The translations under genes were made by a program, and so were the position numbers. From Podarcis erhardii (lineage: Eukaryota), in the NCBI GenBank assembly GCA_964252035.1, contig OZ176202.1: DNA of 64,000 bases. One strand, given 5' to 3'. Shown piece after piece: positions 1 through 44,347 of this stretch (positions within the stretch are counted from its first letter, which is position 1; each line of letters begins with the position of its first letter). The notes under the pieces were generated by a model. It ran no database searches and was not told where the DNA came from. It worked only from the letters and a program-made list of their open reading frames with translations.

Positions 1-445
1 ATTCCGTTTGACTCCCGAGGTATGGCTGCATAATGATAGCACCAGGCAAGCCTCACTGGAGAGAACATTCCACAAATGAGAAGTCACGGCAGAGAAGGCC
101 CGTTCTTGCGTTGCCACCCTTCAGATCTCTCGTGGACGCACACAAAAAGGGCCTCAGGTGATGATTGCAGGGTCTGTGTTGGTTCATATGGGGAGAGGCG
201 GTATTTGAGGTATTGCAGTCTTGGGCCATTTAAGGCTTTATAGGCTAAAACCAGCACTTTGATTTGGGCCCAGGAACTAATTGGCAGCCAGTGCAGTTGG
301 GTCATGATCAGTGTAATATGCTCATACTGTCCTGCCCGGCTGAGCCACCAGCTCTGCTGAATTCTGCATCAGCTGAAGTTTCCGAACCATCTTCAGAGGC
401 AGTCCCACATATCATGCATTGCAGTAACCTTACCTAGAGGTTATC
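1..445 (-). mobile_element. L2-type LINE 3' fragment
   Basis: LHWLPI...KVLVLAYKAL motif; similar to 10323-10934. Confidence 0.8.
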
Positions 446-35069: not shown

Positions 35070-35831
35070 TGTCAGGGCTGCCCGAGGTCCCAGCTCACAA
35101 AGGACCAACGCCAGGTCATTGTTATATGCAAAAGTCTTTATTGAAGTTCAGTTTCTATTTCAAAGCCGTGGCGCGCAGCTCTACGTCTTAAACTCTAGAC
35201 CGCCGAAGCTCCGTCTGAATCTCCTCCCCCCAGACACCAGTTTAAGACTCTAGCCTTGCTCCACCTCTTCCTTCGCTCCTTTCTCCTCTGGGTCCGCCTG
35301 TCCGCTGGGGTCTCGCCCTTTCTGGACTCTTCTGATGCTGAGTCCCCTGAGTCATCCCCCACCCTCCGGCGGGCTTTAGGACCTGGTTCCCCCTCCGGGC
35401 TACCTGCTGTGCCGCGCGTCTGTACATTTGAACTTGGCGCGCGCGCCCAGCCGGCAACCTTCCTCCTGACCGTTCCCTCGCTCTCCGATGGAGGCGTGGT
35501 CAGCCCTAACTCATCTTCTCTCCCTCCTGGAGGAGACGCTGGCCCTGACACCTGAGATTCTTCCCCCCCACTACACTCTGGTGGGGAAGCTGGTCCTGAT
35601 CTCCAGCAGCTGCTCTGGGAATCCCCGCTGGCCCCTTGCTTCTGGTGCGTCCCCCCTGGAACCCCCCTTGCCCTGGCCATCGGCGCCCCCCTCTGGGAAT
35701 CTTCTGATTCGCTGGAAAGGCTCATGGAATCTCTCGGGCCACTGTCATCTTCTCCCATGCTGCCCTCAGATTCTTCCCCTTCGCTCTCCATTCCCTCTCC
35801 TCCCTGTGCCTCTGCTCCTGAGCCCCTGACA
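35070..35831 (-). mobile_element. Solo LTR (762 bp) of a second Gypsy-type family
   Basis: TGTCAGGG...CCCTGACA inverted termini, perfect 5-bp TSD CATGT (35065-35069 and 35832-35836), AATAAA on - strand at 35142-35137, reading frame open from 35830 to the stop at 35195. Confidence 0.9.
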
Positions 35832-36731
35832 CATGTGGACCAGATTTCTTGTATACCCAGATGTCTTCCATTTACTTAATGTCATCCATCCCATTTATGT
35901 CAGTGGTAGGGATGCCAATGTGAATCATTCACTTTATCCCTGTGGTACATAAAAAACAGTTTTTTATGCATATAAAAACCTGTATTTTGTGAGCTCTTGA
36001 TGCCTTTTGTTTTCAAAATATGCTGGCAAAAGATGTATATTTGTCTTTAAAACCTAGATACAACCAATATTCACCCATATTTCAAAAAGAACTTGTTAAT
36101 CTCCCCATTTAAGCATTCAGCATCACAAAGGGATTTTACCAGATTTTAAAACTTTAATCAAAAGTGCTACTCTAGGCTATACTTTTAAGTATAGACTCTA
36201 CAGGTATTTTGCTCAGTTCAGCTATTGTAAACTTGAGGCACTTCTCATAGAGGTGGTGGGATGGCTTTTCAACTCTTGGTTCATTTCCTCTTGCGTTGAG
36301 TCTATCCACCCTAACAAATGTCCCAAATGGCATAGAAATTTCTGGGCAGTGGGTATGTTTTCCCTTTTAGTTGAGGCAGTTATAGGCATATCAATGGGGC
36401 TTTCACTTCCTAAATTTTTCACTCAAAGCTTGTCAACATGTTGGAACTTTTTACAGGTTGACTAGTTCTTTATAACGTAACAGTTGGCTGTGCTGTTGTA
36501 TATAATGGCAAGCATTATTTGGAAAATTATGAGGCTTTTCTGGGCACCAGAGTATTAGGCCAGTCTCTTCTTTCAGATGTCGCTGAAGGAGTGTCACTAA
36601 AGGAAAAGAGGAGGAAATACATAACGAATCCATAAACTGTAGAGTGAGTAACTATAGCTAGTGCTATTTGTAGAAGGCCATTAGGTTAAAACATGTCAAA
36701 CATGTTTTACGTCCTGATCATGAAGACCTTG

Positions 36732-37127
36732 TGTGATGGGATAGTGAGCTGCTTGTGCGTAAAAGCTTGATCCCTCTGGGGTTTGGCTGGTCATCCAAAC
36801 CGATGCACTAACGGAGCCCCCAAAGCATGACTCCGTCAGTCGCTGGTAGTATCTGACAGTGGGCGTCTACGGAATTTACGCCAACATAAAAGCTCTTTGA
36901 CAGACATGCGCTTTCGAGACTCTCTGCGTGACAGTTTCCGGCGAAGGGTGGGCGTTCCCAACGGGGGTCCCGTTACCTCTCCACTACTCTCACTGGAAGC
37001 ATCCCAGAGCCTCCCCTCCGCTGTGACTCCTGCACTCCCCCTGCTGGTTCCCTCTTCTACTGCAGATTCTCTCCTATTCTCCTGTAGCCTGTCCACCACC
37101 TGTCTCTCCGATGGCAGTTCCCTGACA
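36732..37127 (-). repeat. 3' LTR (396 bp); U3 and the start of R are protein coding
   Basis: Direct repeat of 41825-42220; contains the last 96 codons and the stop of pol. Confidence 0.97.
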
Positions 37128-40100
37128 TCCACCTCCCCCCCAGGGCCCCCTTCACCCCCTCCCGCCTCCTCTCCCACTGGCGGTGAGGGCGGAAAGCCCC
37201 TGAAGGAACTCTCCTCGTCGTCCGAGGATTCTAACACTTCCGGCCACGGCGTACCGTCTCTCTCCCCGTCTTCCTCTTCTTCGTCGGAGTCGGCTTCTTC
37301 ACCCACCCCTGACTCTGGGAACCCTTCAAACTCTCCTTCCTCATCGGTGGTCCCAAAGTGTTCCCTTCTAAATCGAGCCACGGGTTGCGGTTTTCTTGGG
37401 AAACGCTGATGAAATGTTTCTATTAAAATCTCGTCATTGACTACCTCTGCTGGTACCCAAGTGTTTTCCGACTCTGCTTCCCCCTCCCATTCTACCAGAT
37501 ATTCCACCTGATTTCCCTTCCACCTGGAATCAATGATTCCTGCCACGTTCATGTCGCGCTCTCTCTCTTCTATCACGGGCGTTTGGGTGGCCTCTCTCTC
37601 ACGCTCCCCCCACTCGCGTCCCTCTCGGTACGGCGACAGTAATGACCTGTGAAATACTGGGTGTAATTTCATGTGACTGGGCAGCCTGAGTTTGAATGCC
37701 ACTGGGTTGACCTGCTGTATGACCTCAAAGGGTCCCAATCTTTTGGGCCTCAATTTCTTACTCCCGCCCTTGAACGGTAGCCCTTGGGTGGACAACCACA
37801 CCCGGTCCCCCACCCTTATAGTTTCACCTTCCCTCCTATTTCTGTCTGCTTGCTTCTTATATTCTTCCTTGGCTTTCTCTAAGTTAAGTTGAAGCTGACG
37901 GTGGATCGCCTCCATCTCTTCAAAAAAATATTCCGCCGCCGGCACGCTCCACCTCTCCCCTCCCTCTCCTGGGAATGCCCGGGGGTGACACCCATAATTT
38001 GCCAGGAAGGGACTCATCCCTGTGGACACGTTCTCCGCGTTGTTGTAGGCAAATTCTGCTAGAGGTAACTTATCCACCCAATCATTTTCTCTGTCCTTTA
38101 CATAACACCTCAAGTATTGTTGTAAAACCCCATTTGCCCTTTCCGCTTGCCCATTGGTTTCTGGGTGCCGGGCAGTTGAGAAATTGAGTTCTACGTGCAG
38201 TAAGCTCATAAGTTTCCTCCAGAACCTGGAAGTAAATTGTTTCCCTCTGTCGCTGACCACCCTCAAGGGGGCGCCATGCAACTTGAAAATATGTTCTACA
38301 AACAACTTGGCGGTTTCCTCCGCTGTGACTGCATGTGAACAAGCTATAAAATGACACATCTTGGTTAATTGATCTACCACCACCATGACAGCTGTTTTGC
38401 CTTTGGATTTTGGCAGGTCCGTCATAAAATCTATGGATACTGCCTCCCATGGCCTTTCAGGCGTGGGTAAGGGTTGTAATAGCCCCGCTGGCGCCACCCT
38501 CTCTCCTTTCGCTCGCTGGCACCTGTCGCAACCCCTGACATATTCCCGTACGTCCTCCCTCACCTTGGGCCACCAAAACTCCCTGGTAACCAACCACATG
38601 GTTTTGTGCTGTCCAAAATGTCCCGCTGTGGGGCTGTCATGCAACTGCTTGAGTACTCTGCCCCTCAGTTCCCCGTCGGGTATGTACAGTGCCCCTTTGT
38701 AATACAACGCCCCGTTCTTTTCTTCGAACCCCCCTGTGTTCTCCTCTGTCCTCCGGAGCTCTCTGAGTTTCTCTTGGGCGTATTCATCGTTCTCCGTACC
38801 CTCTATCAGTTCCCTCTGCCCCACCAATGCCGCCCCACACACCCAGCGGTCTTCAGGGATTACATGCCTTGCCTCAGGCGCTCCCTCCCCCTCTAAGTAC
38901 TCAGGTTTCCTGGAAAGAGCGTCCGCCCTCACGTTCTCGGAGCCGGGCACGTAACGAATCTCAAAGTGGAATTTGGAGAACTCCTGGGCCCATCTCACTT
39001 GTCTCTGGTTCAGCACTCGGGCTGTTCTCCAGTATTCCAGATTTTTGTGGTCAGTTCGGACTTGAACCTTGTGCTGCGCCCCAATCAGCAAGTGCCGCCA
39101 TTTCCGGAATGCTTCATGAATGGCGAGCAGTTCTCGGTCGTACACTGTGTAGTTCCTCTCTGATTTGTTCAACTTCCGCGAGAAGAATGCACACGGTCTC
39201 CATTCAGACGTATCTTTTCCCGGCTGGAGAAGAACGGCCCCCACCGCTCGGTCTGACGCGTCAGTCTCCACTCTCATTGGTTGTTGTAGATCCACGTGCA
39301 AGAGTTGCTCTTCCGACGCAAACGCCTGCTTTAAGCGTTCGAACGCTTGTTGCGCTTCTCCCGTCCAAACAAATTTCTTTTTGCTACTAAGACAATCCGT
39401 GATGGGCGCTGTTAAATGGGCAAAGTTTTTGATGAACTTCCTATAGAAGTTTCCGAAGCCCAGGAACCTTTGCACGTCCTTCTTGGTCTTTGGTGTTTTC
39501 CATTCCAGTACCGCTTGAACCTTGCTGGGATCCATGGCCAATCCCTTGTCAGACAACCGGTACCCCAGGAATTCCACCTCCTTGGTATGAAACTGACACT
39601 TCTCCAGTTTCACCCACAGCCGGTTTTCTCGCAGCTTGCTCAGTACCTCTCTTACATCTCGCACATGCTGCTCCTCATTGTCTGAGTACACCAGAACGTC
39701 ATCTAAGAACGCTACGCAGTTCTTGTAGAGCAGTGGCCCCAGGACGTGATTCATGAATGATTGAAAACAGGCGGAGCCCCCTTGTAATCCGAAAGGCATA
39801 ACGGTGTACTCAAAGGCCCCCAAGGGGGTGAACATAGTGGTCTTCCACTCATCCCCCTTTCTCACACGTATCAAGTTATATGCCCCCCTAAGGTCCAGCT
39901 TGGTAAAAATTTTCCCTTTTCTCACCCGTGTTAGAATGTCATCAATTCTGGGCATAGGGAAAGTCACTGGTTCTGACACTGCATTTAGGGCCCTGAAATC
40001 ACATACAAGCCTGGGCTTGCCTGTGTTTTTTTTGTCCACAAAGAACACTGGGCTGCCCCCCACCGCTCGTGACTCTCTGATGAAACCTCGCTTGAGATTC

Positions 40101-40819
40101 TTGTCAATGAACTCCCTTAACTCCTGCATCTCACTGTCTGACATTGCATACAGCTTGCCCACTGGCAATTGTGCTCCTGGGAGTAAGGTAATTTGACAAT
40201 CAAAGGGTCTGTGCGGGGGCAGTTTATCTGCTTCTTTTTCGCTGAATACGTCAAGCAAGTCAGCGTATTGTGGTGGCACCCTCCCTTTGTCCATCACTTC
40301 CATCCCTGCTAGAGTGCCCCTGGCGCCTGCCTGAGCCTCTCCCTCCTTGCAGTGTTCTAGGCAATGTGCTGATCCAAAGGAAACCACTCTCTGATGCCAG
40401 CCTACTAGCGGATCGTGTAGCGCCAGCCAGCTCATACCCAAGATAATAGGAGCTCCTCCCAAGGTGGCTACGTTAAACGCTATCAGTTCGGTGTGTCGTG
40501 CCACCCTCATTATCATTGGTACAGTCTGTTGGCTCACTTCTCCTCCCAACAGCTCCCTCCCATCAATCGTGGTAACCTGCAAAGGCTTACTCAATGGGAT
40601 AGTCTGTATTTGGTGTGCAGCTGCAAACTCTTTGCTCATGAAATTACATGAGCTACCTGAATCCAATAGCGCCTTTATCTTCAGTGGGTGTCCGTTTGCC
40701 AGTTCCAGCAACACCTCTATCACAAGCGCTGGTCTTGGAGGTTCCGGCGTGGGCACATTCATTACTCCCTGGCCTGGCTGCTGTGCCCTGATGTTGGCAA
40801 CCAGGCGTTGGCTTTTACT
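36836..40819 (-). CDS. Pol: aspartic protease, RT, RNase H, integrase, chromodomain, acidic tail and LTR-encoded basic tail (in the -1 frame relative to gag)
   Basis: LLDSG (40655-40663); RT FLDD (39698-39709); RNase H DAS/ELLA/TDH; integrase H-x6-H...CDRC, DFMTDL/DRG/ERAN and GPF; chromodomain 37398-37552; no stop up to 36836. Start uncertain (frameshift near 40813-40819, or AUG at 40762). Confidence 0.96.
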   Translation of the reverse strand, partial: SKSQRLVANIRAQQPGQGVMNVPTPEPPRPALVIEVLLELANGHPLKIKALLDSGSSCNFMSKEFAAAHQIQTIPLSKPLQVTTIDGRELLGGEVSQQTVPMIMRVARHTELIAFNVATLGGAPIILGMSWLALHDPLVGWHQRVVSFGSAHCLEHCKEGEAQAGARGTLAGMEVMDKGRVPPQYADLLDVFSEKEADKLPPHRPFDCQITLLPGAQLPVGKLYAMSDSEMQELREFIDKNLKRGFIRESRAVGGSPVFFVDKKNTGKPRLVCDFRALNAVSEPVTFPMPRIDDILTRVRKGKIFTKLDLRGAYNLIRVRKGDEWKTTMFTPLGAFEYTVMPFGLQGGSACFQSFMNHVLGPLLYKNCVAFLDDVLVYSDNEEQHVRDVREVLSKLRENRLWVKLEKCQFHTKEVEFLGYRLSDKGLAMDPSKVQAVLEWKTPKTKKDVQRFLGFGNFYRKFIKNFAHLTAPITDCLSSKKKFVWTGEAQQAFERLKQAFASEEQLLHVDLQQPMRVETDASDRAVGAVLLQPGKDTSEWRPCAFFSRKLNKSERNYTVYDRELLAIHEAFRKWRHLLIGAQHKVQVRTDHKNLEYWRTARVLNQRQVRWAQEFSKFHFEIRYVPGSENVRADALSRKPEYLEGEGAPEARHVIPEDRWVCGAALVGQRELIEGTENDEYAQEKLRELRRTEENTGGFEEKNGALYYKGALYIPDGELRGRVLKQLHDSPTAGHFGQHKTMWLVTREFWWPKVREDVREYVRGCDRCQRAKGERVAPAGLLQPLPTPERPWEAVSIDFMTDLPKSKGKTAVMVVVDQLTKMCHFIACSHAVTAEETAKLFVEHIFKLHGAPLRVVSDRGKQFTSRFWRKLMSLLHVELNFSTARHPETNGQAERANGVLQQYLRCYVKDRENDWVDKLPLAEFAYNNAENVSTGMSPFLANYGCHPRAFPGEGGERWSVPAAEYFFEEMEAIHRQLQLNLEKAKEEYKKQADRNRREGETIRVGDRVWLSTQGLPFKGGSKKLRPKRLGPFEVIQQVNPVAFKLRLPSHMKLHPVFHRSLLSPYREGREWGEREREATQTPVIEERERDMNVAGIIDSRWKGNQVEYLVEWEGEAESENTWVPAEVVNDEILIETFHQRFPRKPQPVARFRREHFGTTDEEGEFEGFPESGVGEEADSDEEEEDGERDGTPWPEVLESSDDEESSFRGFPPSPPVGEEAGGGEGGPGGEVDVRELPSERQVVDRLQENRRESAVEEGTSRGSAGVTAEGRLWDASSESSGEVTGPPLGTPTLRRKLSRRESRKRMSVKELLCWRKFRRRPLSDTTSD
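37128..37141 (-). promoter_or_regulatory. Polypurine tract GGGGGGGAGGTGGA
   Basis: Purine-rich run abutting the 3' LTR TG; translated as part of pol (GGEVD). Confidence 0.85.
40751..40819 (-). promoter_or_regulatory. Gag-pol recoding signal: H-type pseudoknot with upstream A-GUA-AAA and embedded UAAUG
   Basis: Stem 1 40806-40797 with 40781-40772 (10 bp, one GU); stem 2 40788-40782 with 40757-40751 (7 bp); 6-nt spacer after the heptamer 40819-40813. Confidence 0.75.
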
Positions 40820-41778
40820 GGCTCCGTGATTTCTTCTTCCTCCTTCCCCCCAACAGTTCCCGCCATCCCTTGCCATTCCTTCCTTTGCGGACAGACTCTG
40901 GCAAAGTGACCTGGCTGTTGGCAGAGATAGCATCTCTTGCCGCTCTTTCCCTCCTTCTTCCGCCCTTCACTGGTGTTTGAAACTGCGCGCGCGCGCGCTG
41001 TTCCAAGTTCCATCGGCTCTGCTGGCGGGAAAGGCTGCTCCGGAATCTCTGGAATGCGGAAGTCCTTCCAACGTTCCCCCTTTCCTTCCCGCTTTTCCAT
41101 AGCTCTAGCTTCCTGGCGTGCGCCAATGGACAGCGCTGATTTAGTCAGCTGATCCATAGACTCCGCCCTAGGCGCCCGGGAAAGTTCATCTTTCACTGCC
41201 GGAGAGAGACCTTCTTCAAACAGCATTTGAATAGGTTCACTAGCAAGGTCCCACCCAAGTCTATGAATCAGCATGGTGAACTCAGTCCAGTACTCACGTA
41301 CAGATCGGCTCCCCTGTTTACACGCCATTAACTGCCTGCGCACCACTCCCTGCTCGATCTCGCTGGAAAACATCAAGTCCATGGCGCGGAAAAACTTCAT
41401 TGTGTCCTTTAAGATTTCATTATTGGCTGCCATCAGGGGCCGAACCCAGTCCCTCGCCCCTCCCTCTAGATGGCCAATCACGTACGCCACTCTAGAGTTC
41501 TCGTCGGGGAAGTCATCAAACAGTAGATTGAGAGCATATTGCATCTCTGTCCTAAAGGCTTGATAGTTCCGGGGATCCCCCCCAAATTTCTGCACCAGTC
41601 CAGGCACCCGTCTGGCAAGTGGGGTGGTTTTCCCCTTATCTGCATCTTGAGCCCTCCTCTCCTCGAGCCTCGCCGTTTGCAGTGCCAGCTGGACCTCCAA
41701 CGCCCTGTACCTTTGTTCCAGGCTTGGATCTGCGCCAGCTCCCGCTCCTGCTCCTCCGGTTCCGGATGGTTCGCTCAT
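40762..41778 (-). CDS. Gag (338 aa; PEG10/sushi-like capsid region, CCHC zinc knuckle)
   Basis: ATG at 41778 (gcatcATG); coiled-coil N-terminus, FGGDPRNYQAFR capsid-like segment, CYLCQQPGHFARVC knuckle; TAA at 40764-40762. Confidence 0.95.
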   Translation of the reverse strand: MSEPSGTGGAGAGAGADPSLEQRYRALEVQLALQTARLEERRAQDADKGKTTPLARRVPGLVQKFGGDPRNYQAFRTEMQYALNLLFDDFPDENSRVAYVIGHLEGGARDWVRPLMAANNEILKDTMKFFRAMDLMFSSEIEQGVVRRQLMACKQGSRSVREYWTEFTMLIHRLGWDLASEPIQMLFEEGLSPAVKDELSRAPRAESMDQLTKSALSIGARQEARAMEKREGKGERWKDFRIPEIPEQPFPPAEPMELGTARARAVSNTSEGRKKEGKSGKRCYLCQQPGHFARVCPQRKEWQGMAGTVGGKEEEEITEPVKANAWLPTSGHSSQARE

Positions 41779-41811
41779 GATGCCTTCTGCTTGCACAAGC
41801 TGCTTTCAAAG

Positions 41812-41821
41812 ACTGTCAGAT
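41812..41821 (-). promoter_or_regulatory. Self-priming type primer-binding site (ATCTGACAGT)
   Basis: No TGG/tRNA-type PBS after the 5' LTR; perfect 10-nt complement ACTGTCAGAT lies in the 5' LTR at 41953-41944. Confidence 0.75.
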
Positions 41822-41824
41822 TGC

Positions 41825-42220
41825 TGTGATGGGATAGTGAGCTGCTTGTGCGTAAAAGCTTGATCCCTCTGGGGTTTGGCTGGTCATCCAAACCGATGCA
41901 CTAACGGAGCCCCCAAAGCATGACTCCGTCAGTCGCTGGTAGTATCTGACAGTGGGCGTCTACGGAATTTACGCCAACATAAAAGCTCTTTGACAGACAT
42001 GCGCTTTCGAGACTCTCTGCGTGACAGTTTCCGGCGAAGGGTGGGCGTTCCCAACGGGGGTCCCGTTACCTCTCCACTACTCTCACTGGAAGCATCCCAG
42101 AGCCTCCCCTCCGCTGTGACTCCTGCACTCCCCCTGCTGGTTCCCTCTTCTACTGCAGATTCTCTCCTATTCTCCTGTAGCCTGTCCACCACCTGTCTCT
42201 CCGATGGCAGTTCCCTGACA
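41825..42220 (-). repeat. 5' LTR (396 bp)
   Basis: TGTCAGGG...CCCATCACA on the - strand; no difference from 36732-37127 by eye. Confidence 0.97.
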
Positions 42221-42575
42221 CCTTGATTTGGACATAAGCTTGTTACAAAACTGGTTTTTGAATACATGTGCTTGGGATCACAGCGTATCTTTACTAACTA
42301 TCTTGGCTTCTAGCAATGTACTGATGCATCAGCTTACTAAAATAAACATACGATTATCTCAGTAAAGTTTTTCAATGGGAGATTTTATTTAATGAAGGAA
42401 AGCGGGTTCTCCTTCGTTAATGAACCCACAGAATCGGAGGGGAGAGTCAGGTCAAAAAGTCATATTAAAGTTGTTCAAAAATTCACATTGAAACACACAA
42501 ACCAACAATGACATCAGTTCTAAATACACTTTCCCAGGAACATATCTGACCCAAAGAATCATGATAACCCTACAG

Positions 42576-42747: not shown

Positions 42748-42943
42748 CTCTTTAGGAATGGACCACATTAATTCAGTGTTCCTAAGCATCAGTAAATGCT
42801 GATAGTAGATGTAGTAGTAGAATTAGTAATTTTTCTTATTATTTTCCATGTTATTTTTAGATTGTTGAGATGGACAAAGGAAATTTGCCCCTATTCTAAA
42901 TTTCCTTGTTTTTTGTTTGTTTTGTTTTTTGTGGCTCTTGCAG

Positions 42944-44347
42944 AACTCGATCAGGCACAACTTGTCTCTTCATAGTCGATTCATCAGGGTACAGAATGAA
43001 GGAACTGGGAAAAGTTCGTGGTGGATGATCAACCCTGACGGTGGGAAAGGTGGGAAAGCGCCACGGAGACGTGCTGTTTCGATGGATAACAGCAACAAGT
43101 ACACCAAGAGCCGAGGACGAGCAGCTAAGAAGAAGGCAGCACTACAAGCTGCACAGGAAACAAGCGAAGACAGCCCCTCCCAGCTCTCCAAGTGGCCAGG
43201 TAGCCCAACTTCACGCAGCAGCGATGAGCTAGACGCCTGGACAGATTTCCGGTCTCGTACAAATTCAAATGCCAGTACAATAAGTGGCCGCTTGTCACCA
43301 ATACTGGCCAGCACTGAGCTAGATGAGGTTCAGGATGATGATGCTCCACTTTCCCCTATGCTGTATAGTAGTCCACCCAGCATGTCTCCCTCAGTAAATA
43401 AACCTGGCAATGTTGAGCTGCCAAGGTTGACTGATATGGCGGGCACCATGAACTTGAACGATGGTCTGACAGACAATCTTATGGATGATCTTTTGGACAA
43501 TATAACCCTCCCCTCTTCCCAGCAGTCGCCCACAGGGGGACTCATGCAAAGAAGCTCAAGTTTTCCATACGGCTCCAAAGGTTCAGGTCTTGGTTCACCA
43601 TCGAGTAGTTTCAACAACGCTGTGTTTGGACCATCATCACTGAATTCCCTCCGTCAGTCTCCCATGCAAACCATCCAAGAGAACAAGCAAGCTACATTTT
43701 CTTCCATTTCGCATTACAATAACCAAACACTGCAGGATCTGCTGGCTTCGGATTCGCATAGCCACAGCGATGTCATGATGACCCAGTCTGATCCACTCAT
43801 GTCACAAGCTAGCACAGCTGTGTCTGCCCATAACGTACGCAGGAATATTATGCTCCGGAATGATCCCATGATGTCGTTTGCTGCCCAGCCAAGTCAGGGG
43901 AGTTTGGTCAACCAGAATCTGCTCCACCACCAGCACCAGTCCCAGAATTCCTCTCTCGGTGGCAGTCGTGCCTTGTCGAATTCCGTCGGTACTATGGGCT
44001 TAAGTGACACAAGCAACGTTGGGTCGACAAAACACCAGCAACAGTCACCTGCCAACCAGTCTATGCAATCGCTTTCTGACTCACTCTCAGGCTCTTCTTT
44101 GTACTCCAGCAGTGTGAGCCTTCCAGTCATGGGGCATGATAAATTCCCCAGTGATTTGGACCTGGATATTTTCAACGGGAGCTTGGAATGTGATATGGAG
44201 TCCATTATCCGCAGCGAACTCATGGATGCAGATGGGTTGGATTTTAACTTTGATTCCCTCATCTCAGCCCAGAATGTTGTCACTCTGAATGTGGGAAACT
44301 TCACTGGTGCTAAGCAAGCTTCGTCACAGAGTTGGGTTCCAGGCTAA
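42944..44347 (+). CDS. FOXO3: Forkhead box O3, last coding exon (C-terminal part of forkhead domain through the transactivation domain)
   Basis: Polypyrimidine tract + CAG acceptor at 42941-42943, phase 0, then NSIRHNLSLHSRF...; Akt motifs RRRAVSMD and RSRTNSNA, QRSSSF, C-terminal DLDLDIFNGSLECDMESIIRSELMD and SQSWVPG end match FOXO3 rather than FOXO1/4/6. The first 9 residues of the ORF-track protein (42917-42943) are intronic. Confidence 0.98.
   Translation, partial: NSIRHNLSLHSRFIRVQNEGTGKSSWWMINPDGGKGGKAPRRRAVSMDNSNKYTKSRGRAAKKKAALQAAQETSEDSPSQLSKWPGSPTSRSSDELDAWTDFRSRTNSNASTISGRLSPILASTELDEVQDDDAPLSPMLYSSPPSMSPSVNKPGNVELPRLTDMAGTMNLNDGLTDNLMDDLLDNITLPSSQQSPTGGLMQRSSSFPYGSKGSGLGSPSSSFNNAVFGPSSLNSLRQSPMQTIQENKQATFSSISHYNNQTLQDLLASDSHSHSDVMMTQSDPLMSQASTAVSAHNVRRNIMLRNDPMMSFAAQPSQGSLVNQNLLHHQHQSQNSSLGGSRALSNSVGTMGLSDTSNVGSTKHQQQSPANQSMQSLSDSLSGSSLYSSSVSLPVMGHDKFPSDLDLDIFNGSLECDMESIIRSELMDADGLDFNFDSLISAQNVVTLNVGNFTGAKQASSQSWVPG

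What the first reader, a model, noticed from the sequence alone, without database searches (positions are those of the whole stretch)
37180..37355. Retrotransposon integrase tail with two acidic FxGF motifs resembling LEDGF/TND-interacting motifs
Seen: directly after the chromodomain, Pol continues into a ~90-aa acidic, low-complexity tail containing TTDEEGE-FEGF (FEGF at 37330-37319) and SSDDEESS-FRGF (FRGF at 37204-37193). Each is preceded by an acidic run with S/T-x-x-D/E CK2-type sites. Established: an acidic stretch plus FxGF is the integrase-binding-domain motif (IBM/TIM) used by MLL1, JPO2/CDCA7L, PogZ, IWS1, ASK and MED1 to bind LEDGF/p75 and HRP2, and related TFIIS N-terminal domains; CK2 phosphorylation increases binding. 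LEDGF is also the tether that targets HIV-1 integrase to transcribed gene bodies. Inference: this lizard chromovirus may have independently evolved mimicry of host TIMs to target integration into actively elongated chromatin, consistent with its position in a long intron of an expressed gene. I am not aware of this being described for an LTR retrotransposon.
Basis: partly seen in the sequence, partly recalled or inferred. Interest (0 to 1): 0.92.

Follow-up and report, generated by a model that had tools for sequence, protein, structure and literature searches.

The report
Retrotransposon integrase tail mimicking LEDGF-binding motifs
A young, intact lizard "gypsy"-type jumping gene carries, after its integrase, two short conserved peptide modules that look just like the motifs host proteins use to dock onto the chromatin tethers LEDGF/HRP2. 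This suggests, but does not yet prove, that it steers insertion into transcribed genes much as HIV does, by a different route.

Summary
An intact 5,489-bp Ty3/gypsy chromovirus lies on the minus strand, with 100% identical 396-bp LTRs and a CCTTG target duplication. Its Pol runs past the chromodomain into a disordered acidic tail with FEGF (37330-37319) and FRGF (37204-37193).

The motifs are not low-complexity noise:
- Each sits in a three-part module: a hydrophobic segment (predicted helical for module 1 only), an 8-9 residue acidic/Ser/Thr linker, then F/L/M-x-G-F. This is the published architecture of LEDGF/HRP2 IBD-binding motifs.
- The module is present in every tail-bearing member of one well-supported clade (Podarcis muralis, P. 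lilfordi, two unidentified samples). That includes a branch with only about 51% integrase identity, whose module shares STFHGFD with the validated DPF3a motif.
- About 100 other chromoviruses lack it.
- Synonymous sites are saturated while the tail's protein sequence is conserved.
- The same clade has lost the chromodomain's aromatic cage, which suggests a switch of targeting mechanism.

Binding to LEDGF/HRP2 was not testable here, and the insertion-site evidence is a single case in a FOXO intron. I found no prior description. Other first-stage notes of this scan flagged similar tails elsewhere in this genome.

Verdict: a real, selected short linear motif and a probable (about 0.55) LEDGF/HRP2 tether, which would be a new variant of integrase tethering.

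The parts
41825..42220 (-). 5' LTR (396 bp, TG...CA)
   Evidence: 100% identical to 36732-37127
36732..37127 (-). 3' LTR; its first 292 nt (37127-36836) lie inside the Pol ORF and hold its last 97 codons, stop included
36727..36731 (.). Target-site duplication CCTTG (second copy at 42221-42225)
   Evidence: Flanks printed
40762..41796 (-). gag (Retrotrans_gag, Ty3 capsid, CCHC knuckle)
36836..40933 (-). pol ORF, 1365 aa, uninterrupted: PR-RT-RNaseH-IN(H2C2, rve, SH3)-chromodomain-tail
37403..37546 (-). Chromodomain (aa 1130-1177). Only the middle Trp of the aromatic cage is kept; the first and third aromatic positions are Met/Asn and Glu.
   Evidence: Pfam PF00385; cage table against 100 other chromoviruses; confident AF2 fold
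37355..37381 (-). Module 1, hydrophobic segment VARFRREHF (aa 1185-1193); F1188 and F1193 are nearly invariant in the clade
   Evidence: Column table; AF2 helix at aa 1185-1191
37331..37354 (-). Module 1, 8-residue acidic linker GTTDEEGE with CK2-type T-x-x-E sites; T1196 is nearly invariant
37319..37330 (-). Module 1, FEGF (aa 1202-1205). In the 16-row clade alignment G1204 is invariant and F1205 is present in 15 of 16 rows. The first position is F, L or M in relatives.
37247..37318 (-). Variable acidic spacer between the modules (aa 1206-1229), with indels among relatives
37193..37246 (-). Module 2: WPEVL + ESSDDEESS + FRGF (aa 1230-1247). It matches [E/D]-x-[E/S]-x-F-x-G-F in full. The F-x-G-F core is kept in all 10 full-length group A rows and P0015; the x varies (R, W, Q, L).
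37128..37167 (-). Polypurine tract, translated as the Gly/Glu-rich stretch just before the LTR; conserved at the nucleotide level
   Evidence: pS 0.20 here against at least 0.75 elsewhere
36875..36901 (-). LTR-encoded C-terminal segment VKELLCWRK (aa 1345-1353) inside a basic stretch; conserved even in the distant relative L001
   Evidence: AF2 helix

Best explanation
The integrase of this chromovirus clade ends in an intrinsically disordered tail with one or two short linear motifs. These copy the host's LEDGF/HRP2 IBD-binding motif (a TIM): a short amphipathic segment, an 8-9 residue acidic, CK2-phosphorylatable linker, then F-x-G-F. Proposed mechanism, which is inferred: after nuclear entry, the tail of the intasome-bound integrase docks into the two hydrophobic pockets and basic patch of the IBD/TND of PSIP1 (LEDGF) and/or HDGFL2 (HRP2). 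The PWWP domains of those proteins read H3K36me2/3 nucleosomes, so the intasome is tethered to transcribed gene bodies. Two modules, together with multimeric integrase, would add avidity, and linker phosphorylation would raise affinity. What is shown: the motifs exist, they are conserved and selected at the protein level, they are a synapomorphy of one clade, and they co-occur with loss of the chromodomain's methyl-lysine cage. What is inferred: the binding partner and the targeting outcome.
For: Anatomy:
- The element is intact, with identical LTRs.

Conservation:
- Both modules are kept in Podarcis group A proteins, which are 82-85% identical in the integrase.
- Modules are kept in P0004, P0005, P0007, P0048, P0281 and the distant P0015.
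- They are kept at the identical offset, 21 aa after the chromodomain, in group B, which is about 51% identical in the integrase.
- G and the last F are invariant in all 18 module instances, while the x position varies freely (E, V, R, W, Q, H, L, I).

Single origin:
- All bearers form one clade (SH-aLRT 100), and the 20 clade rows whose tail is present all carry the motif.
- About 100 other chromoviruses end 3-30 aa after the chromodomain or have tails without the motif.

Selection:
- For window against L002, pS is 0.83 (saturated) in the tail with pN 0.26. The chromodomain gives pN 0.23 and the integrase 0.15.
- The PPT codons show pS 0.20, so constraint in the modules is on the protein, not the nucleotides.

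Fit to the family definition:
- A TIM is a helix, an 8-16 aa acidic linker and FxGF, and FxGF is essential for LEDGF/HRP2 (PMC9987994).
- Published consensus is D/ExExFxGF (PMC8022399) or S/ExFxGF (PMC7337902).
- The validated DPF3a peptide LFGSTSESDTSTFHGFDEDD resembles group B ...WLFTPTLSASTFHGFDSDE.
- AF2 gives a disordered tail with a helix at aa 1185-1191.

Context:
- All 15 module bearers have lost the first and third cage aromatics, against about 3% of the others.
- No variant among those listed falls in the FxGF codons, in thousands of contigs from four organisms.
Against: - No binding test of any kind could be run.
- Profile and sequence searches of the PDB with the modules found nothing. 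That is uninformative for a short linear motif, but it also gives no support.
- In the window copy, module 1 has Gly rather than E/S at position -2.
- Module 2 has a Pro inside its hydrophobic segment, no helix is predicted there, and this Pro is private to this copy.
- The first F of module 1 is L or M in many relatives.
- Short acidic-aromatic motifs are promiscuous.
- The co-occurrence with cage loss amounts to one or two evolutionary events, not 15.
- Taxonomic sampling is narrow (Podarcis plus unidentified samples).
- Only one insertion site was examined.
Confidence: 0.55

Rival explanations
1. The modules are a real, selected short linear motif but bind a different partner. Candidates are another TFIIS-N-terminal-domain protein (IWS1, PNUTS, ELOA, MED26, TFIIS), histone H2A-H2B through an acidic-aromatic (DEF/Y-type) anchor, or a coactivator surface that reads acidic-hydrophobic activation-domain-like peptides. 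The tail would still serve tethering, nuclear retention or regulation of integrase, but not through LEDGF/HRP2.
For: The conservation and selection evidence says nothing about the partner. TIMs as a class bind several TNDs (PMC9987994). The tail is strongly acidic with aromatic anchors. In group B the position of module 2 is occupied by a Trp-rich acidic stretch rather than FxGF, so an FxGF-independent acidic-aromatic function also exists in the clade.
Against: The invariant residues are exactly the G and the last F of FxGF, plus a hydrophobic residue three positions before. According to the review, FxGF is specific to and essential for LEDGF/HRP2 partners and absent from TIMs of the other TNDs. 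A DEF/Y-type histone anchor would not require the Gly or the second Phe.
Confidence: 0.3
2. The motifs are a chance product of a low-complexity, purine-rich read-through between the chromodomain and the PPT/LTR, and have no function of their own.
For: The region is acidic and low in complexity. The ORF simply continues until the first stop inside the LTR. One FxGF arises in 7.7% of shuffles of the tail.
Against: Two FxGF arise in only 0.14% of shuffles. The motif is kept at a fixed offset across lineages whose synonymous sites are saturated. Indels in the tail are all in frame. The x position varies while F, G and F do not. No other chromovirus tail has the motif.
Confidence: 0.05
3. The conservation reflects a cis-acting nucleic-acid element upstream of the PPT (for example for plus-strand priming or RNA structure), not the peptide.
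For: The modules lie 66-250 nt upstream of the 3' LTR, and the adjoining PPT is clearly constrained at the nucleotide level (pS 0.20).
Against: Synonymous sites in the module region are saturated (pS 0.71-0.83) while amino acids are conserved. Group B encodes the same F-x-G-F with a completely different linker sequence.
Confidence: 0.03

Closest known systems
Cellular IBD-binding motifs / TND-interacting motifs of KMT2A (MLL1), JPO2/CDCA7L, POGZ, IWS1, ASK, MED1, DPF3a and Drosophila JIL-1
   Same: Both have a disordered context, a short hydrophobic helix, an 8-16 residue acidic linker with CK2-type Ser/Thr, and an F-x-G-F core preceded by E/D or S at -4 and -2. Several partners carry two motifs. 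Group B shares STFHGFD with the validated DPF3a peptide (PMC9987994, PMC8022399, PMC7337902, PMC6877644).
   Different: Here the motif sits at the C-terminus of a retrotransposon integrase, not in a host transcription factor. Binding is untested. Module 1 of the window copy deviates at -2 (Gly), and its two helix Phe residues are spaced i, i+5 rather than the i, i+4 of MLL1 F129/F133.
Lentiviral integrase-LEDGF/p75 tethering (HIV-1)
   Same: The proposed outcome is the same: integrase is docked on the LEDGF/HRP2 IBD and integration is directed to H3K36me3-marked transcribed gene bodies (PMC9987994, 'Viral mimicry' section).
   Different: HIV-1 integrase binds the IBD through its folded catalytic-core dimer interface, not through a host-like linear FxGF motif (my knowledge of the field). 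The element here would use true motif mimicry in a disordered tail, and it is a Ty3/gypsy retrotransposon, not a retrovirus.
Short linear motifs in other integrases: gammaretroviral (MLV) integrase C-terminal tail with the BET ET domain; deltaretroviral integrase with PP2A-B56 (PMC7542444); Ty1 integrase C-terminus with Pol III AC40 (PMC7459421); Ty5 integrase with Sir4
   Same: A short peptide, usually in the disordered C-terminal part of integrase, copies or exploits a host docking motif and decides where integration happens.
   Different: The host partners and chromatin targets differ. None of these uses the LEDGF/HRP2 motif.
Chromoviral chromodomain targeting (MAGGY group I chromodomain reading H3K9me2/3)
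   Same: The element class is the same and so is the position: a C-terminal extension of integrase devoted to chromatin targeting (PMC3350952).
   Different: This clade has lost two (group A) or all three (group B) cage aromatics, so H3K9me reading is unlikely. The tail modules are an added, different device. Cage-less 'group II' chromodomains were reported only from plants (PMC3350952).
POGZ, a domesticated pogo transposase that binds LEDGF/p75
   Same: It is a transposon-derived protein that carries an IBD-binding motif (cited in PMC8022399 and PMC7337902).
   Different: POGZ is a host gene derived from a DNA transposon. It is not an active element, and its motif is not known to serve integration.

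Membership tests
LEDGF/HRP2 IBD-binding motif (IBM; FxGF-type TIM) | F-x-G-F core | tested here: met
   FEGF is aa 1202-1205 and FRGF is aa 1244-1247. G and the last F are invariant in all 18 module instances of the clade.
LEDGF/HRP2 IBD-binding motif (IBM; FxGF-type TIM) | Acidic or phosphorylatable residues at -4 and -2: [E/D]-x-[E/S]-x-F-x-G-F | tested here: met
   Module 2 (E-E-S-S-FRGF) fits fully. Module 1 of the window copy has E at -4 but G at -2, whereas most relatives have E at -2 and group B has S at -2, like DPF3a and ASK.
LEDGF/HRP2 IBD-binding motif (IBM; FxGF-type TIM) | Upstream short helix with hydrophobic anchors, joined by an 8-16 residue acidic flexible linker | tested here: inconclusive
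   Hydrophobic segments with 8-9 residue acidic/Ser/Thr linkers are present in both modules and conserved. AF2 predicts a helix for module 1 (aa 1185-1191) but not for module 2, where this copy has a Pro. Helices that form only on binding cannot be judged from a monomer model.
LEDGF/HRP2 IBD-binding motif (IBM; FxGF-type TIM) | Lies in an intrinsically disordered region | tested here: met
   AF2 pLDDT is below 55 throughout the tail apart from the two short helices, while the chromodomain scores 86-93.
LEDGF/HRP2 IBD-binding motif (IBM; FxGF-type TIM) | CK2 phosphorylation of the linker raises affinity | not testable with these tools
   S/T-x-x-D/E sites are present (T1195, T1196, S1236, S1237) and T1196 is nearly invariant. 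Phosphorylation itself cannot be tested here.
LEDGF/HRP2 IBD-binding motif (IBM; FxGF-type TIM) | Direct binding to the IBD that is abolished by F>A changes or by IBD basic-patch mutations | not testable with these tools
   Complex prediction accepts only session sequences or prokaryotic/phage Swiss-Prot references, and no PSIP1/HDGFL2 sequence could be brought in under the rules. PDB sequence searches with the modules were blank.
Chromovirus (Ty3/gypsy with chromodomain at the integrase C-terminus) | LTRs, gag, and PR-RT-RH-IN order with a C-terminal chromodomain | tested here: met
Group I ('classical') retrotransposon chromodomain, as expected for vertebrate chromoviruses | Three aromatic cage residues (Y24, W45, Y48 in HP1 numbering) | tested here: not met
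   Only the Trp is kept in the window copy and group A, and none in group B. About 97 of 100 other chromoviruses keep all three. Definition from PMC3350952.

The most novel reading that the evidence does not exclude
One clade of vertebrate chromoviruses abandoned the ancestral H3K9me-reading chromodomain cage. It acquired instead host-mimicking LEDGF/HRP2 docking motifs in a new integrase tail. It thereby converged with lentiviruses on the same chromatin tether, but through true linear-motif mimicry, and moved its integration from heterochromatin to transcribed gene bodies. It would be the first retrotransposon shown to use LEDGF/HRP2.
Probability: 0.45. Interest if true: 0.88.

Novelty: new variant of a known kind. 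Interest (0 to 1): 0.76.

Why it matters
Integration-site choice decides how harmful or how successful a mobile element is. So far LEDGF/HRP2 tethering is known as a lentiviral speciality that works through a folded integrase surface.

A Ty3/gypsy element that reaches the same tether by copying the host's own FxGF docking motif would matter in three ways:
- It would be a clean case of convergent evolution between retrotransposons and retroviruses.
- It would be a natural example of linear-motif mimicry in a transposon.
- It would be a ready-made comparison within one genome. Cage-retaining chromoviruses and motif-bearing ones sit side by side, which allows a test of how tether choice shapes transposon distribution.

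The claim is directly testable with two peptides and one host domain.

Tried and rejected
- **PDB searches.** A profile search of PDB sequences with an 18-instance module alignment, and a phmmer search with the 91-aa tail, both at E up to 10, returned nothing. HMMER is not suited to short acidic motifs, so this counts neither way.
- **ESM Atlas.** A feature search with the tail gave no usable hit.
- **Fragment search.** The third homology search, with chromodomain plus modules as a short query to find fragments in other taxa, gave only one more protein (Podarcis lilfordi). Breadth beyond Podarcis remains open.
- **dN/dS.** Classical values could not be computed because synonymous sites are saturated, so I report pN and pS instead.
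- **Complex prediction.** Complex prediction was not used.
- **Literature.** Searches for FxGF or LEDGF together with retrotransposon or chromovirus found no prior description. Two key papers (Sharma 2018, Cermakova 2021) are not held.
- **FFAT-like reading.** Group B's DFFDD was considered as an FFAT-like motif. It was rejected because it is not shared with group A.
- **AP-2 reading.** W-x-x-F followed by acidic residues was considered as an AP-2 ear motif. It was rejected because neither it nor FFAT explains the invariant G-F.
- **HP1 chromoshadow motif.** A PxVxL motif was considered in PWPEVL. The spacing does not fit.
- **Plain FxGF counts.** Plain FxGF is common (132 hits) in Ty3/gypsy Pols, mostly from the folded RT motif around F-L-G-F/Y, so plain FxGF counts are meaningless without context.
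Full report
**1. What is there**

The finding lies inside a complete LTR retrotransposon on the minus strand.
- Two 396-bp LTRs (36732-37127 and 41825-42220) are 100% identical, start with TG and end with CA. They are flanked by a 5-bp target duplication, CCTTG. The element is 5,489 bp long.
- gag (41796-40762) has Retrotrans_gag/Ty3-capsid and CCHC matches.
- pol (40933-36836) is one uninterrupted 1365-aa ORF. It holds protease, RT, RNase H, an integrase zinc finger, the integrase core, a Tf2-type SH3 domain and a chromodomain at aa 1130-1177. It is therefore a chromovirus.
- It sits antisense about 0.7 kb upstream of an exon on the plus strand (ORF 42917-44347) that encodes the FOXO forkhead C-terminus, KIX-binding domain and TAD, so it is inside a FOXO intron.

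**2.

After the chromodomain the ORF continues for 188 aa.
- The first 92 aa (to nt 37128) are encoded by internal sequence. The remaining 97 codons, including the stop, run through the polypurine tract boundary and into the 3' LTR.
- Both are preceded by acidic runs with S/T-x-x-D/E sites.
- In shuffles of the 92-aa tail that keep its composition, two FxGF arise in 0.14% of cases and the full published consensus in 0.7%.

**3. Each FxGF is the end of a larger module**

Reading upstream gives:
- Module 1: VARFRREHF + GTTDEEGE + FEGF.
- Module 2: WPEVL + ESSDDEESS + FRGF.

Each is a hydrophobic segment, an 8-9 residue acidic/Ser/Thr linker, then F-x-G-F.

This is the three-part anatomy that the TND review gives for TND-interacting motifs: an obligate short helix, an acidic linker of 8-16 residues often phosphorylated by CK2, and an FxGF part. 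The FxGF part is found in, and essential for, all known partners of the LEDGF and HRP2 domains (PMC9987994).
- MLL1 follows this plan, with the helix IBM1 (F129, F133) and IBM2 (F148-x-G-F151). Its stated consensus is D/E-x-E-x-F-x-G-F (PMC8022399).
- The HRP2-DPF3a paper gives S/E-x-F-x-G-F and a validated peptide, LFGSTSESDTSTFHGFDEDD. Phosphorylation of the Ser at -2 strengthens its binding (PMC7337902).
- Drosophila JIL-1 uses DFxGFDE on the LEDGF homologue JASPer (PMC6877644).

Module 2 of the window copy fits the consensus completely. Module 1 fits except for Gly at -2.

**4. Conservation**

- Homology searches found Podarcis muralis Pol proteins that are 82-85% identical in the integrase ('group A'). 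They keep both modules, with [F/L/M]EGF in the first and the F-x-G-F core in the second.
- Twelve further cluster members were checked. All nine whose tail is present keep both modules, with the x of the second motif varying (R, W, Q). The three that lack them are truncated before the tail.
- An exhaustive profile search added more distant carriers: P0004 (a Logan contig), P0005, P0007 and P0048 (Podarcis fragments) and P0015 (an ENA metagenome contig). P0015 is 63% identical to the window in the C-terminal part of the integrase. Each has a hydrophobic-x-x-V/I-F segment, an 8-9 residue linker and F-x-G-F.
- In P0015 the first module has decayed but the second is intact.
- A Podarcis lilfordi fragment keeps module 1.
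- A second Podarcis lineage, only about 51% identical in the integrase ('group B'), carries [D/E]-[F/Y]-FDDWLF + TPTLSAST + F-[Q/H/R]-G-F. It lies at exactly the same offset, 21 residues after the chromodomain. In one member this reads STFHGFD, identical over seven residues to the validated DPF3a motif.
- Across the clade alignment, the only tail positions downstream of the short conserved KPxP segment and upstream of the PPT that reach 88% or more are F1188, F1193, T1196, G1204 and F1205.

**5. Controls**

- Among about 100 other chromovirus Pols from fungi, fish, amphibians and metagenomes, 68 end within 25 residues of the chromodomain. The 36 with longer tails have no such module.
- A separate squamate clade (Anolis, Rhineura and others) has long acidic tails but no FxGF.
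- A loose pattern search over 188,497 residues outside the clade gives six hits. Four of them are a folded RT motif.

**6. One origin**

A maximum-likelihood tree of the integrase places all bearers in a single clade of 20 rows (SH-aLRT 100, stem 0.8 changes per site). Group B is sister to P0015 plus group A. The module is therefore a retained synapomorphy. It also means the comparative evidence counts as one gain followed by long retention.

**7. Selection acts on the protein**

Codon alignments compared the window with the two relatives for which DNA could be fetched (L002, L001).

| Region (window vs L002) | pN | pS |
|---|---|---|
| Integrase C-terminus + SH3 | 0.15 | 0.77 |
| Chromodomain | 0.23 | 0.91 |
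| Tail with modules | 0.26 | 0.83 |
| PPT codons | 0.10 | 0.20 |

- Synonymous differences are at saturation (pS 0.71-0.91) in the integrase, chromodomain and tail across all three pairwise comparisons.
- Non-synonymous differences in the tail are about the same as in the chromodomain.
- The PPT codons show low pS, the signature of nucleotide-level constraint, and so serve as an internal contrast.
- All indels in the tail are in frame.

This rules out neutral read-through and a cis-acting nucleic-acid explanation for the modules.

**8. Structure**

AlphaFold2 with the clade alignment gives a confident chromodomain and a disordered tail. It predicts two short helices, at aa 1185-1191 (the hydrophobic segment of module 1) and at aa 1345-1353 (the LTR-encoded KELLCWRK). 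Module 2 is not predicted helical in this copy.

Contigs of four runs from four coded organisms all read a different letter at 37242. The Pro at aa 1231 is therefore private to the window copy.

**9. Population data**

Near-identical sequence is held by runs of at least nine coded organisms, with thousands of contigs in some, so the family is abundant and shared among related species. Among the listed variants none falls in the FEGF or FRGF codons. The list is truncated, so this is weak support. No RNA holder was on record, so expression is unknown.

**10. A linked change in the chromodomain**

Classical chromodomains read methyl-lysine with three aromatics (Y24, W45, Y48). Fungal and vertebrate chromoviruses are described as carrying this 'group I' type, and cage-less 'group II' domains as known only from plants (PMC3350952).

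In my sample about 97 of 100 other chromoviruses keep all three aromatics. All 15 module bearers have lost the first and third, and group B has lost the Trp too. Because the bearers are one clade this is one or two events. It fits a replacement of the ancestral H3K9me-directed targeting by a different tether.

**11. Interpretation**

The best reading is that the tail is a host-mimicking docking device for the IBD of LEDGF and/or HRP2. These proteins would tether the intasome to H3K36me-marked, transcribed chromatin.
- Shown here: the existence, architecture, conservation, selection and clade distribution of the modules, and the loss of the cage.
- Inferred: the partner and the targeting outcome.
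- Main rival: the same motif serving another acidic-aromatic reader. The invariant Gly-Phe and the literature statement that FxGF is specific to LEDGF/HRP2 partners argue against that, but do not exclude it.
- Insertion site: the intronic, antisense position of this copy is compatible with the idea but is a single case, and antisense intronic copies are also what selection tends to leave.

**12. Limits**

- No binding or docking test could be run.
- Sampling of hosts is narrow, because few squamate proteomes include transposon ORFs.
- Two source samples are unidentified.
- The PDB and Atlas searches were uninformative.
N stretches in the window (151 letters) were left alone.

**13. Novelty**

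Literature searches found no report of an FxGF/IBM motif in any retrotransposon or retroviral integrase tail. Precedents exist for the principle: the MLV integrase tail with BET, the deltaretroviral integrase with B56 (PMC7542444), and Ty1 integrase with AC40 (PMC7459421). Lentiviruses use the same tether through a folded surface. It is therefore a new variant of a known kind of system.

Other first-stage notes of this scan flagged similar FxGF tails on other pieces of this genome. These are unverified and not independent.

Noticed in passing
window 37403-37546 (-): The chromodomain of this clade lacks the first and third aromatic cage residues, and group B relatives also lack the Trp. This is a 'group II-like' chromodomain in a vertebrate chromovirus, although PMC3350952 states that group II is known only from plants.
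   Followed up: partly
window 36836-37127 (-): Pol is read through the PPT and 292 nt into the 3' LTR. The LTR-encoded end (basic stretch plus ...KELLCWRKFRRRPLSD...) is conserved in Podarcis relatives and, as ...GLLCWKRR..., in the distant L001. pN/pS is about 0.5, and AF2 predicts a helix at aa 1345-1353. Its function is unknown; a nuclear localisation signal or a nucleosome or DNA anchor are possibilities.
   Followed up: partly
window 41812-41821 and 5' LTR positions 268-277 (minus strand): There is no tRNA-type TGG primer-binding site after the 5' LTR. Instead, a 10-nt stretch (ATCTGACAGT) 3 nt downstream of the LTR is perfectly complementary to LTR positions 268-277 (expected by chance about 0.004). 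This is compatible with Tf1/sushi-type self-priming.
   Followed up: partly
window 35195-35791 (-): A 198-aa ORF with no Pfam match, acidic and Ser-rich, ends in a basic/Trp segment (...RRKERRKRWSKARVLNWC...). It resembles in style the LTR-encoded Pol tail and may be the coding LTR of another chromovirus family.
   Followed up: no
window 42917-44347 (+): An ORF holding a FOXO exon (Forkhead C-terminal part, FOXO KIX-binding domain and FOXO TAD). The element's 5' LTR ends about 0.7 kb upstream of it, in antisense orientation.
   Followed up: partly
window 37242, 36850, 37429, 37514, 38113: At 37242 every laid contig covering the site, in all four runs, reads a letter different from the window; at 36850, 37429, 37514 and 38113 nearly all do. 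These are letters private or nearly private to this copy or individual. The one at 37242 makes aa 1231 a Pro inside module 2.
   Followed up: partly
P0085, P0168-P0172, P0181 (Podarcis group B), about 60-80 aa after the chromodomain: Where group A has module 2, group B has a conserved Trp-rich acidic segment (...SYWWDD.PEE.W.RKW...). This is a different acidic-aromatic motif of unknown partner.
   Followed up: no
window 36897-37409 (+): A 170-aa ORF lies on the opposite strand across the tail and LTR. It is most likely a by-product of the stop-poor, G+C-rich purine/pyrimidine composition.
   Followed up: no
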